This document shows, one piece after another, positions 21,829 through 23,295 of a stretch of 64,000 nucleotides of DNA (position 1 is its first letter; each line of letters starts with the position of its first letter). The stretch is from Octopus bimaculoides (Eukaryota): positions 7,998,581 through 8,062,580 of the forward strand of contig NC_068981.1 of NCBI RefSeq assembly GCF_001194135.2, in the 5' to 3' direction. The notes under the pieces are model-generated. The model searched no databases. It saw only the letters and a list, made by a program, of their open reading frames with translations, and was not told the origin of the DNA. A program made the position numbers and the translations under genes.

Positions 21829-22120
21829 TCATTTAAAATACAGAGATGCCTGTAATAGGACATCTAACCCGCTAGAAATAGCAGCAAAAGACTATATACC
21901 ACAAAAGTAGTGATAATTTCGAAAGGGAATGAAAAATAAAAACATTTACCAATCTATATTCTGTGGTATATAGTCTTTTGCTGCTATTTCTAGTGGGTTA
22001 GATGTCCTATTACAGGCATCTCTGTATTTTAAATGAATAATACATAGTCTATTGACTGTTTTTTACTCTCGCTAGACCACTGGTGGTAAATAAAATTTCT
22101 AAAATTTTTTTGCTACCCTG
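21829..22120. repeat. Unclassified interspersed repeat (family E) carrying a 75-bp inverted duplication
   Basis: Arms 21829-21903 and 21962-22036 have 1 mismatch. The downstream part is homologous to 23215-23295 and ends ACCCTGTA next to a TA-rich tract. Confidence 0.8.
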
Positions 22121-22203
22121 TATTTTATTATATATATAGATGTATGTATGTATGTATGTATGTATGTATGTATGTATGTATGTATGTATGTATGTATGTA
22201 TGT

Positions 22204-22440
22204 ATAATAGTAAATAATATATAGTAGATATATATATATGCATATATGGGTACAGGATATCACCAACGGTTCAAACAACATGAAATAAGCAAACAAACGG
22301 GTTAGATACATAAACAACAAGAAAAACTGGAGAACAGGGCAAGCAACACAGAGAAAGGACCCTTCATCAGTTGTCGGCTGTCTATCTACTTCTCATTTCG
22401 AGCATTCAGCGACAACATGAAGATTCAATATGACAATTCT
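22204..22440 (-). mobile_element. Penelope-like terminal repeat (family P)
   Basis: Homologous to 45985-46160 (+) and 22965-23060; shared CGAAA-N5-AGTAGATA...CAACTGATGAAGGG and TCCTGTACCCATATATGCAT. Assignment to Penelope is an inference from the CTGATGAAGG and CGAAA motifs. Confidence 0.5.
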
Positions 22441-22709
22441 AAAATAGAATTTAGGATTTATGGAGGGGCAAAGTGGGGAACAAAAACATGACAGTGGAGA
22501 CATACAAGGAAAGCGAACGCAAACAAACATGGAGAGTCTTTAGACCAGAACGAAAGGAAAATAGTGAACGCTGTGAGAAATATCCTTTTGAAAACAGAAA
22601 AGATAGAAGAGGGAGAAAAAACGTCCGCTCTTTTGAACGTCCGTGCAGGAAAAGAAAGATGGTCATGTGGGGAAAAGAAAGGTGGACGATGGTCACGTGG
22701 GAGCAACTA

Positions 22710-22830
22710 GAGAGAGAGAGAGACAGACAGAGAAAAGAGAGAGAGACAGAGAAAAGAGAGAGAGACAGAGAAAAGAGAGAGAGACAGAGAAAAGAGAGAG
22801 AGACAGAGAAAAGAGAGAGAGACAGATAGA
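22710..22830. repeat. GA-rich minisatellite, unit of about 20 bp (AGAGAGAGAGACAGAGAAAA) x about 5
   Basis: Directly visible; periodic EKRERDR pseudo-peptide in the ORF track. Confidence 0.9.
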
Positions 22831-22964
22831 AAATGATGAAGGTGGGAGGGGGAGAAAACGGAATTACGAAAGGATGGAGGAAGAGAACAGTATAGAGAAG
22901 AGAGTCGCATCAACAAAGGTGAAGATAAATTTACTTGGAAATAGATGCGTGGCGTTCAACTAAA

Positions 22965-23060
22965 TAATAGATAGTAAATAATATATTTTACATATATATA
23001 CCTGCATATATGGGTACAAGACATCACCAACGTTTCAAACAACATGAAATACGCAGAAAC
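22965..23060 (-). mobile_element. Family P partial copy
   Basis: ATAGTAAATAATATAT...GCATATATGGGTACAAGACATCACCAACGTTTCAAACAACATGAAATA repeats 22207-22290. Confidence 0.7.
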
Positions 23061-23071
23061 CATGGTCCAGG

Positions 23072-23295
23072 AGATAGATGGTAAATGTTTTTATTTTTCA
23101 TTCCCTTCAAAGTTTATCCCTAATAGTGGTTTGGATTTTGGCTATTCCTTCTAGCGTACCAGGAATCTTAGCACGGATACCTATTATGTGTTTAAATGTT
23201 CACTGTATTTATATGAATAATATATAGTCTATTGACTAATTTTTCTACACGCTAGGCTACTGGTAGTAAAAATTTGAAAAGTTTTTATTACCCTG
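23072..23295. repeat. Family E repeat, unrearranged paralogue of 21829-22120
   Basis: GATAGATGGTAAATGTTTTTATTTTTCATTCCCTT matches the reverse complement of the 21904-21961 spacer, then continues colinearly with the right arm and tail; ends ACCCTGATA before (TA)n. Confidence 0.75.

What the first reader, a model, noticed from the sequence alone, without database searches (positions are those of the whole stretch)
21829..23295. 75-bp fold-back with its unrearranged ancestor 1 kb away: inverted repeat plus inverted spacer
Seen: the arms (21829-21903, 21962-22036) differ at 1 of 75 positions. The 58-nt spacer matches the paralogue at 23072-23130 only as its reverse complement, whereas the right arm and tail are colinear with 23130-23295. 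So an ancestral S-A-T became rc(A)-rc(S)-A-T, starting exactly at the edge of a (TA)n tract. Known: this is the signature predicted for local replication template switching. The arms are far more similar to each other than to the paralogue, implying a recent event. It is a rare case where the mechanism can be read from one window.
Basis: partly seen in the sequence, partly recalled or inferred. Interest (0 to 1): 0.7.

Follow-up and report, generated by a model that had tools for sequence, protein, structure and literature searches.

The report
Inverted duplication hairpin in octopus repeat DNA
A 208-base hairpin-forming stretch in non-coding, repeat-rich octopus DNA looks like one copying accident that flipped 58 bases and added an inverted 75-base copy next to them; this kind of mutation is already well documented, so the case is tidy but ordinary.

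Summary
The fold-back is real in the sequence. The arms, 21829-21903 and 21962-22036, match at 74 of 75 positions, with a 58-nt spacer and a (TA)17 tract one base from the left arm. The spacer matches the copy at 23066-23126 only as its reverse complement (z=8.8). The outer 18 nt of the right arm plus the tail match 23200-23300 colinearly (z=13). The inner 57 nt of the arm is not significantly similar to that copy (p 0.08-0.35).

[quoted passage not shown] It is a known kind of mutation, not a rare one.

The mechanism cannot be read uniquely from one window. A staggered-break micro-inversion gives the same product. So does twin priming of a retroposon, and the S-A-T unit does look like an insert into another repeat.

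The window is a gap-rich, short-contig draft of an octopus genome. No independent assembly or further family copies could be reached.

The single arm mismatch is a CpG-to-TpG change, which argues against a trivial assembly artefact.

Best reading: an in-situ replication template switch (confidence about 0.45). Interest is low.

The parts
21793..21828 (.). (AT)17.5 tract plus one C, directly abutting the outer end of the left arm. This is novel junction 1 (21828|21829).
   Evidence: TRF and the sequence. The chance of abutting such a tract is about 0.4%.
21829..21903 (-). Left arm = rc(A). Read on the minus strand it continues colinearly from S.
   Evidence: 74/75 to the right arm. The minus strand 21963->21843 aligns to paralogue positions 3-118 (nhmmer E=2.6e-5). 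Three-way alignment.
21904..21961 (-). Spacer = rc(S), an inverted copy of the S segment.
   Evidence: Reverse-complement match to 23066-23126, 49/55, z=8.8. The 26-nt core GGTAAATGTTTTTATTTTTCATTCCC is identical and occurs only twice in the window.
21962..22036 (+). Right arm = A. Novel junction 2 lies at 21961|21962. The arm carries the derived T at 21994 (CpG->TpG).
   Evidence: The paralogue and the left arm both read TTCTAGCG; the right arm reads TTCTAGTG.
22037..22125 (+). Tail T, colinear with the paralogue together with the last 18 nt of the right arm.
   Evidence: 22019-22125 against 23200-23300: blastn 78.5%, global alignment z=13.
22126..22205 (.). TA-rich start followed by (ATGT)16.5, lying after the tail.
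   Evidence: TRF. The T-plus-TA homology runs to 22157/23335.
22203..22401 (+). Copy c1 of a second repeat family 'F'. It contains the 85-nt 'D4' segment (22207-22291) and has no S-A-T insert.
   Evidence: D4 is 89% identical to 22971-23055. Homology to copy c3 at 46256-46002(-) continues after D4.
22939..23062 (+). 5' part of family F copy c2, lying upstream of the paralogous S-A-T.
   Evidence: GATGCGTGGCGTTC... is shared with c3.
23063..23336 (+). Paralogous unit 'E': S 23066-23126, unalignable middle 23127-23199, T 23200-23300, then (TA)15. It has no fold-back and is probably an insert into F copy c2.
   Evidence: No secondary structure (z=+0.6). Filled-versus-empty-site comparison.
23383..23399 (+). 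Short stretch after the 22-N gap that matches F copy c1 just beyond the point where c1 and c2 diverge (GGGTACAGATACATAAA against GGGTTAGATACATAAA at 22299-22314).
   Evidence: Local alignment p about 0.003 against shuffles; 8 of 2255 window segments score as well. MAFFT and blastn do not extend it.

Best explanation
An existing S-A-T repeat unit in non-coding octopus DNA was rearranged in place by one local replication template switch of type 1-3-4-2 (mirror 3-1-2-4).

Inferred path:
1. The nascent strand left its template at or next to the (TA)17 tract.
2. It re-annealed on the complementary strand at the A/T boundary.
3. It copied A and then S backwards (133 nt, now 21829-21961).
4. It returned to the original template at the S/A boundary and continued through A and T.

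The result is that S is replaced by its reverse complement and an inverted copy of A is added. This makes a 75-bp-stem, 58-nt-loop hairpin where none existed. A later CpG-to-TpG change in the right arm is the only difference between the arms.

Shown: the topology, the two novel junctions, and the two retained ancestral adjacencies.
Inferred: the mechanism, the direction of the switch, and any role of fork stalling at the self-complementary (TA)n tract.
No function is implied; the hairpin is most likely a neutral by-product.
For: - The arms are 74/75 identical.
- rc(spacer) matches paralogue S with z=8.8. A-outer plus T matches paralogue T with z=13.
- Read on the minus strand, the left arm plus spacer is colinear with paralogue S->middle. 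Read on the plus strand, the right arm plus tail is colinear with paralogue middle->T.
- So each arm keeps one ancestral neighbour, and only two junctions are new.
- The inferred unrearranged S-A-T aligns to the paralogue as one colinear hit (E=9e-16).
- The paralogue has no hairpin, so the fold-back is not a family feature within the window.
- The 133-nt copied fragment is within the reported range of up to 318 bp.
- The breakpoint abuts a (TA)17 tract far more closely than chance allows, about 0.4%. 36% of the human template-switch loci examined closely in that study contain low-complexity sequence or VNTRs.
- 2-3 nt of possible microhomology exists at both junctions (TA at 21826-27; TGG/CCA at 21962-66), read directly.
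Against: - There is only one assembly and one diverged paralogue, and no true ancestral allele.
- The inner 57 nt of the arm is not significantly alignable to the paralogue.
- The flank left of the fold-back has no homology to anything upstream of the paralogue, so fragment F1 of the four-point model cannot be checked.
- The locus fails the filters used for high-confidence template-switch calls: at least 95% identity of flanks to the reference, and no low-complexity or repeat sequence.
- The S-A-T unit ends in (TA)n and looks like an insert into another repeat. That makes retroposition-based explanations possible and gives the left (TA)17 another possible meaning, as target or tail.
- S reaches to within about 10 nt of the unit's apparent 5' end. 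Twin priming predicts this more naturally.
- Microhomology at the junctions is minimal.
Confidence: 0.45

Rival explanations
1. Twin priming. The S-A-T unit is a short non-LTR retroposon with a (TA)n-type tail, and the whole block rc(A)-rc(S)-A-T-tail was inserted at once. One cDNA was primed at the tail. A second was primed from the (TA)n target strand annealed to the TA-rich start of T, and ran to the RNA 5' end. The two were then joined head to head.
For: - The product topology matches that of 5'-inverted L1 insertions (PMC2912911).
- The unit looks like an insert into F copy c2 relative to c1 (p about 0.003).
- Both units end in TA-rich simple repeats.
- The left junction lies exactly where the self-complementary (TA)n could pair with ATAATA(C/T)ATA at the start of T.
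- The inverted part reaches to about 10 nt from the unit's apparent 5' end.
Against: - The 75-nt overlap of the two cDNAs is far above the reported median of 12 bp (quartiles 4-17).
- Twin priming is almost absent in the short element Alu, at 0.02% (PMC12016303).
- There is no tRNA-like or Rfam head, no poly(A), and no target-site duplication visible in the low-complexity flanks.
- Only two units occur in 57 kb, and both lie within 1.5 kb. That fits local copying better than a dispersed active family.
- The neighbouring unit is more than 12-20% diverged, so a very recently active master would also be needed.
Confidence: 0.2
2. Staggered-break micro-inversion. A blunt break occurred upstream of S and a pair of single-strand nicks occurred 75 nt apart on either side of A. 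Fill-in followed, and the S-A fragment was rejoined in inverted orientation by end joining.
For: - It produces exactly U-rc(A)-rc(S)-A-T in one event. This is the model proposed for the 59% of Drosophila inversions that are flanked by inverted duplications (PMC1885836).
- There is little or no junction microhomology.
Against: - The model is documented for large chromosomal inversions, not for 133-bp segments.
- It offers no reason for the breakpoint to sit at a (TA)n tract, other than general fragility.
- It cannot be told apart from a template switch using the sequence product alone.
Confidence: 0.1
3. Assembly or library artefact. The fold-back is a chimeric path or chimeric molecule in a short-read draft, not a genomic arrangement.
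For: - The window has 16 N runs in 64 kb, and many of them sit next to (TA)n tracts.
- (TA)n k-mers are strand-ambiguous, so the left junction lies in a context that assemblers handle badly.
- No independent assembly could be retrieved.
Against: - The arms differ at one site, a CpG->TpG transition, so they are not one collapsed node used twice.
- The inner junction 21961|21962 lies in complex sequence and needs real reads.
- The fold-back lies about 1.3 kb from either contig end.
- The spacer is a genuine inverted family segment, not adapter or a zero-spacer palindrome.
Confidence: 0.1
4. Two separate copies of the unit lie head to head, or the block is a fold-back/MITE element. In the first version, a minus-strand copy lost its T by slippage between TA-rich tracts and sits next to a 5'-truncated plus-strand copy. 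In the second, the inverted arms are terminal inverted repeats of a transposon.
For: - Any two inverted partial copies look like arms plus a spacer.
- T is flanked by TA-rich sequence on both sides, so slippage could delete it.
- TA dinucleotides flank positions 21828-22037, as for Tc1/mariner-type MITEs.
- A second, unrelated fold-back with similar geometry exists at 25930-26185.
Against: - It needs two insertions abutting with zero spacing, plus a deletion.
- Homology to the paralogue runs straight through the outer end of the right arm into the tail as one HSP (22019-22124). The arm end is therefore not an element terminus.
- The only other copy lacks the fold-back.
- A TA flank is trivial next to a (TA)n tract.
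Confidence: 0.08

Closest known systems
[quoted passage not shown]
   Same: A contiguous neighbouring segment is copied in reverse complement. This creates an inverted repeat whose spacer is itself inverted, forms a hairpin in one step, and leaves the downstream flank colinear.
   Different: - The copied fragment is long: 133 nt, against mostly tens of nt (though up to 318 bp has been reported).
- The comparison sequence is a diverged paralogue, not an orthologous allele.
- The upstream flank is unverifiable.
- The locus lies in repeat and low-complexity sequence, which the published high-confidence sets exclude.
Ripley-type quasipalindrome correction with spacer inversion (bacteria and yeast; PMC8604942, and PMC5453318 Fig. 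1B)
   Same: An inter-strand switch between inverted-repeat arms homogenises the arms and can flip the spacer. This would explain near-identical arms without a recent origin.
   Different: It needs a pre-existing imperfect inverted repeat. The paralogue shows none, so a pre-existing repeat at this locus is unsupported.
Twin-primed (5'-inverted) non-LTR retroposon insertions (Ostertag & Kazazian 2001; PMC2912911; PMC12016303)
   Same: The layout is inverted upstream segment, then direct downstream segment, then tail. The 5' ends are joined head to head, and the target strand primes internally.
   Different: - The overlap is 75 nt, against a median of 12 bp.
- The unit is short and is not shown to be a retroposon.
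- No target-site duplication or poly(A) is present.
Inversions flanked by inverted duplications from staggered breaks (Ranz et al. 2007, PMC1885836)
   Same: An inverted segment is bordered by an inverted duplicate of the sequence between the staggered nicks.
   Different: The scale differs (133 bp here, kilobases to megabases there), and only one end carries a duplication.
MITEs / fold-back transposons
   Same: Long, near-perfect inverted arms with a short loop, in AT-rich surroundings.
   Different: The arm end is not an element boundary. The only other family copy has no inverted arm.

Membership tests
Template-switch mutation type 1-3-4-2 | The 2->3 fragment is the reverse complement of a contiguous segment of the reference next to the event. 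| tested here: met
   21829-21961 = rc(A)+rc(S). The arms are 74/75 identical. rc(spacer) against paralogue S gives z=8.8. The minus-strand nhmmer hit runs from S into the arm.
Template-switch mutation type 1-3-4-2 | The downstream fragment F3 is colinear with the reference from point 4, with point 4 lying inside the copied interval. This is what makes an inverted repeat plus an inverted spacer. | tested here: met
   22019-22125 is colinear with 23200-23300. The inferred S-A-T aligns as one colinear hit, E=9e-16.
Template-switch mutation type 1-3-4-2 | The upstream fragment F1 is colinear with the reference up to point 1. | tested here: not met
   The flank 21700-21795 shows no similarity to sequence upstream of the paralogue or of F copies (p 0.4-0.97). 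The paralogue sits in a different context, so this does not exclude the model. It leaves the feature unverified.
Template-switch mutation type 1-3-4-2 | Published high-confidence criteria: reference flanks and the 2->3 fragment at least 95% identical, and the fragment not in masked or low-complexity sequence. | tested here: not met
   The paralogue is 78-89% identical where alignable, and the middle 57 nt is not significant. The locus abuts (TA)17 and lies in a repeat unit.
Template-switch mutation type 1-3-4-2 | An ancestral, unrearranged allele exists at the same locus (orthologue or polymorphism). | not testable with these tools
   No octopus DNA was found in the searchable collections. The metagenome scan gave 0 hits. 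Protein hits from octopus come only from UniRef and carry no contigs.
Twin-primed retroposon insertion | The unit is a retroposon: dispersed copies, a 3' tail and target-site duplications. | tested here: inconclusive
   It appears insert-like in F copy c2 (p about 0.003) and has (TA)n tails. But only two copies occur in 57 kb, both local. No tRNA or Rfam head was found. Target-site duplications cannot be read in the low-complexity flanks or across the N gap.
Twin-primed retroposon insertion | The inverted and direct cDNAs meet with a small gap or overlap (median overlap 12 bp). | tested here: not met
   The overlap equals the whole arm, 75 nt, against the figures in PMC12016303. About a quarter of the reported overlaps exceed 20 bp, so this is not an absolute exclusion.
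MITE / fold-back transposon | The inverted arms are the element termini, flanked by a target-site duplication. | tested here: not met
   Homology to the paralogue crosses the outer end of the right arm (HSP 22019-22124). The flanking TA is uninformative beside a (TA)n tract.
MITE / fold-back transposon | Other family copies share the fold-back. | tested here: not met
   The only other copy in the window has no inverted arm and no structure. A genome-wide test was not possible.
microRNA / hairpin RNA gene | A match to a curated RNA family at its gathering score. | tested here: not met
   No hits at gathering score. In E-value mode only generic long-hairpin plant miRNA models appear, far below threshold (MIR841 80.5 bits against 200).

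The most novel reading that the evidence does not exclude
The one-step creation of a 75-bp perfect stem made a new hairpin-RNA locus (an endo-siRNA or proto-miRNA precursor) in an octopus genome. This would be a caught-in-the-act example of the proposed birth of small-RNA genes by template switching (bioRxiv 10.1101/2023.04.19.537475, listed). Nothing here shows transcription or processing.
Probability: 0.03. Interest if true: 0.5.

Novelty: new member of a known kind. Interest (0 to 1): 0.2.

Why it matters
If it is real and arose in place, it is a clean, unusually long example (133 nt copied, 75-bp stem) of a mutation class that makes hairpins in one step. It would come from a mollusc, whereas the catalogues seen here's literature searches cover primates, yeast and bacteria. 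That extends the taxonomic range of a known process but does not change understanding of it. It also gives a practical warning: the same footprint is produced by twin priming and by staggered-break inversion. Single-window calls of 'template switching' inside repeat units should therefore not be taken as mechanistic proof.

Tried and rejected
1. Independent copies of the locus or family.
- An exact scan of metagenome contigs with the 26-nt S core found nothing.
- The 118-aa ORF 350 nt downstream has no homologues in the protein collection.
- An exact look-up of a window ORF found no record.
- Octopus proteins in the collection come only from UniRef and carry no contigs.
- No independent assembly or family census was therefore possible. 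For the same reason I did not spend the last protein search or the representative search.

2. RNA and coding checks. Rfam at gathering score and ARAGORN found nothing in the window. Pfam found nothing in five ORFs.

3. Sequence downstream of the 22-N gap. I thought family F clearly resumed there. MAFFT and blastn did not extend the match beyond 17 nt. It is kept only as a suggestive filled-versus-empty-site signal.

4. Sequence upstream of the (TA)17 tract. I tested whether it is the 5' part of family F. It is not.

5. A 9-nt match between X (22300) and the arm (GGGTTAGAT) is at chance level by my estimate and was dropped.

6. Ostertag & Kazazian 2001 could not be opened. Twin-priming figures are taken from PMC2912911 and PMC12016303 instead.

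Full report
**Setting**

The window is AT-rich (37% G+C) and full of microsatellites. It is broken by 16 runs of N totalling 6,674 N. Many of those gaps sit directly beside (TA)n tracts. It holds no tRNA or Rfam family at gathering score.

An ORF at 34215-34643(-) is 89-92% identical to several Octopus bimaculoides UniRef proteins. It is only about 60% identical to everything else. The window is therefore a short-contig draft of an octopus genome, either O. bimaculoides or a close relative. This is an inference from similarity of a probably repeat-derived ORF, which has many partial Octopus matches. The finding lies in a 2.8-kb contig (20531-23354), about 1.3 kb from either gap. No credible coding sequence surrounds it.

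**The observation**

- The arms 21829-21903 and 21962-22036 are 74/75 identical as reverse complements. They extend to 81 nt at 96%.
- The spacer is 58 nt.
- As single-stranded DNA the region folds at -85 kcal/mol, z = -24.
- An (AT)17.5 tract ends at 21827, and one C separates it from the left arm. The window has 22 such tracts in 57.3 kb, so a random breakpoint would lie this close to one about 0.4% of the time.
- The single mismatch is 21871 against 21994. The left arm reads TTCTAGCG on the minus strand and the right arm reads TTCTAGTG. That is a CpG-to-TpG transition, and the neighbouring copy has CG at the aligned position.

**Relation to the neighbouring copy**

- The spacer matches 23066-23126 only as its reverse complement. 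It is 49/55 identical with z=8.8, has a 41-nt core at 92.7%, and contains a 26-nt exact core that occurs only at these two places.
- The last 18 nt of the right arm plus the tail (22019-22125) are colinear with 23200-23300 (78.5% by blastn; z=13).
- The inner 57 nt of the arm is not significantly similar to the interval between those matches (23127-23199). P values are 0.08-0.35 under four scoring schemes.
- That part of the arm is only carried along when the whole inferred S-A-T is aligned: one colinear nhmmer hit over 213 nt, E=9e-16.
- The neighbour is therefore a diverged paralogue that shares the order S...T. It is not the ancestor.

The key structural fact is visible. Read on the minus strand, spacer plus left arm is S followed by A. 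Read on the plus strand, right arm plus tail is A followed by T. Each arm thus keeps one ancestral neighbour. Only two junctions are new: 21828|21829 and 21961|21962.

- The 85-nt segment upstream of the paralogous S (22971-23055) recurs at 22207-22291 at 89% identity. It belongs to a different repeat, called F here.
- F has a third copy at 46256-46002 on the minus strand.
- Copies c1 (22203-22401) and c3 stay homologous beyond that segment. Copy c2 does not.
- In c2 the S-A-T-(TA)n unit follows instead. Just after the 22-N gap, 17 nt (23383-23399) match c1 exactly where c1 and c2 had parted (p about 0.003).
- This suggests that the S-A-T unit is an insert in c2, with c1 as the empty site. MAFFT and blastn do not extend the match, so I treat this as suggestive only.
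- No further copy of the unit exists in the window.

**Mechanism**

The layout rc(A)-rc(S)-A-T is the published template-switch type 1-3-4-2 (mirror 3-1-2-4). [quoted passage not shown] Copied fragments of up to 318 bp are reported in human haplotype assemblies, so 133 nt is long but within range.

A single switch-and-return explains both novel junctions:
1. The strand leaves its template at the (TA)17 edge.
2. It copies A and then S from the complementary strand.
3. It returns at the S/A boundary.

Possible microhomology at each junction is only 2-3 nt. The self-complementary (TA)n tract is a plausible stalling site, but that is my inference. This is my best explanation, at about 0.45.

**Rivals**

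- *Staggered-break inversion.* A break upstream of S, two nicks either side of A, fill-in and end joining give the identical product (PMC1885836). Sequence alone cannot separate this from a template switch.
- *Twin priming.* If the S-A-T unit is a retroposon, twin priming gives the same topology (PMC2912911). It would neatly explain three things: the left junction at a (TA)n tract opposite the TA-rich start of T, the TA-rich tail, and an inverted part that reaches to about 10 nt from the unit's apparent 5' end. Against it, the 75-nt overlap compares with a reported median of 12 bp. Twin priming is also nearly absent in the short element Alu (PMC12016303). No SINE-like head, poly(A) or target-site duplication is present. 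Both units lie within 1.5 kb of each other.
- *MITE or fold-back element.* This is unlikely, because homology to the paralogue crosses the outer end of the right arm and the paralogue has no hairpin.
- *Assembly artefact.* This cannot be excluded in such a draft. It is disfavoured by the CpG-type difference between the arms, by the complex sequence at the inner junction, and by the distance from the contig ends.

**Age**

One difference in 75 nt, against at least 11-22% divergence from the paralogue, suggests a recent event. However, arm-to-arm template switching can keep inverted repeats homogeneous (PMC8604942 abstract). 'Recent' is therefore likely but not certain.

**Function**

None is indicated. 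Sub-threshold Rfam hits to long-hairpin plant miRNA models simply reflect the stem.

**Verdict**

The feature is real and is correctly described in outline. It is a new instance of a well-known mutation class, lying in non-coding repeat DNA. The claim that the mechanism can be read from this one window is too strong. The decisive data are an orthologous or allelic unrearranged locus, a genome-wide census of the unit, and spanning reads. None of these could be reached here.

Noticed in passing
window 25930-26185: A second strong fold-back, unrelated in sequence. Its arms are 25930-26030 and 26085-26185 (101 nt, 90%), with a 54-nt spacer, which is nearly the same geometry as the finding. No other copy occurs in the window, and no obvious target-site duplication is present.
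   Followed up: partly
window 22203-22401, 22939-23062, 46002-46256(-): A repeat family 'F' with three copies. It has the motifs GATGCGTGGCGTTC, an AT-rich tract, GCATATATGGGTACAGGA and CCCTTCATCAGTTGT. Copy c2 appears to be interrupted by the S-A-T unit.
   Followed up: partly
window 12760-12980, 25590-25790, 26860-27100, 37817-38017, 43010-43200, 54400-54600, 60290-60484, 60840-61050, 62700-62910, 62930-63120: A dispersed repeat of about 200 bp, with copies 70-85% identical in both orientations and often in adjacent pairs. It is weakly self-palindromic at 12761-12976. It is probably a dispersed SINE-like repeat.
   Followed up: no
window 34215-34643 (-): A 142-aa ORF with no Pfam domain. It is 89-92% identical to several Octopus bimaculoides 'uncharacterized' proteins and 50-60% identical to proteins of a tunicate (Styela) and a coral (Montipora) and to many unnamed database entries. 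It is probably the conserved C-terminal part of a widespread retroelement or transposon ORF. It was used here to identify the organism.
   Followed up: partly
window 22717-22826: A 19-nt minisatellite (AGAGAGAGAGACAGAGAAA, 5.8 copies, 98% matches) lies between the two F copies.
   Followed up: no
window 36037-36776 and 281-546: A tandem pair of about 379 bp (36037-36397 and 36416-36776, 87%), with an inverted relative at 281-546 (82-86%).
   Followed up: no
window gaps at 6397, 7182, 9459, 14783, 29046, 61750, 61936; also 23377-23385: Many N gaps are bordered directly by (TA)n tracts, which shows that the assembler breaks at them. The 22-N gap at 23355-23376 is followed by a run of nine G that looks like a gap-edge artefact.
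   Followed up: no
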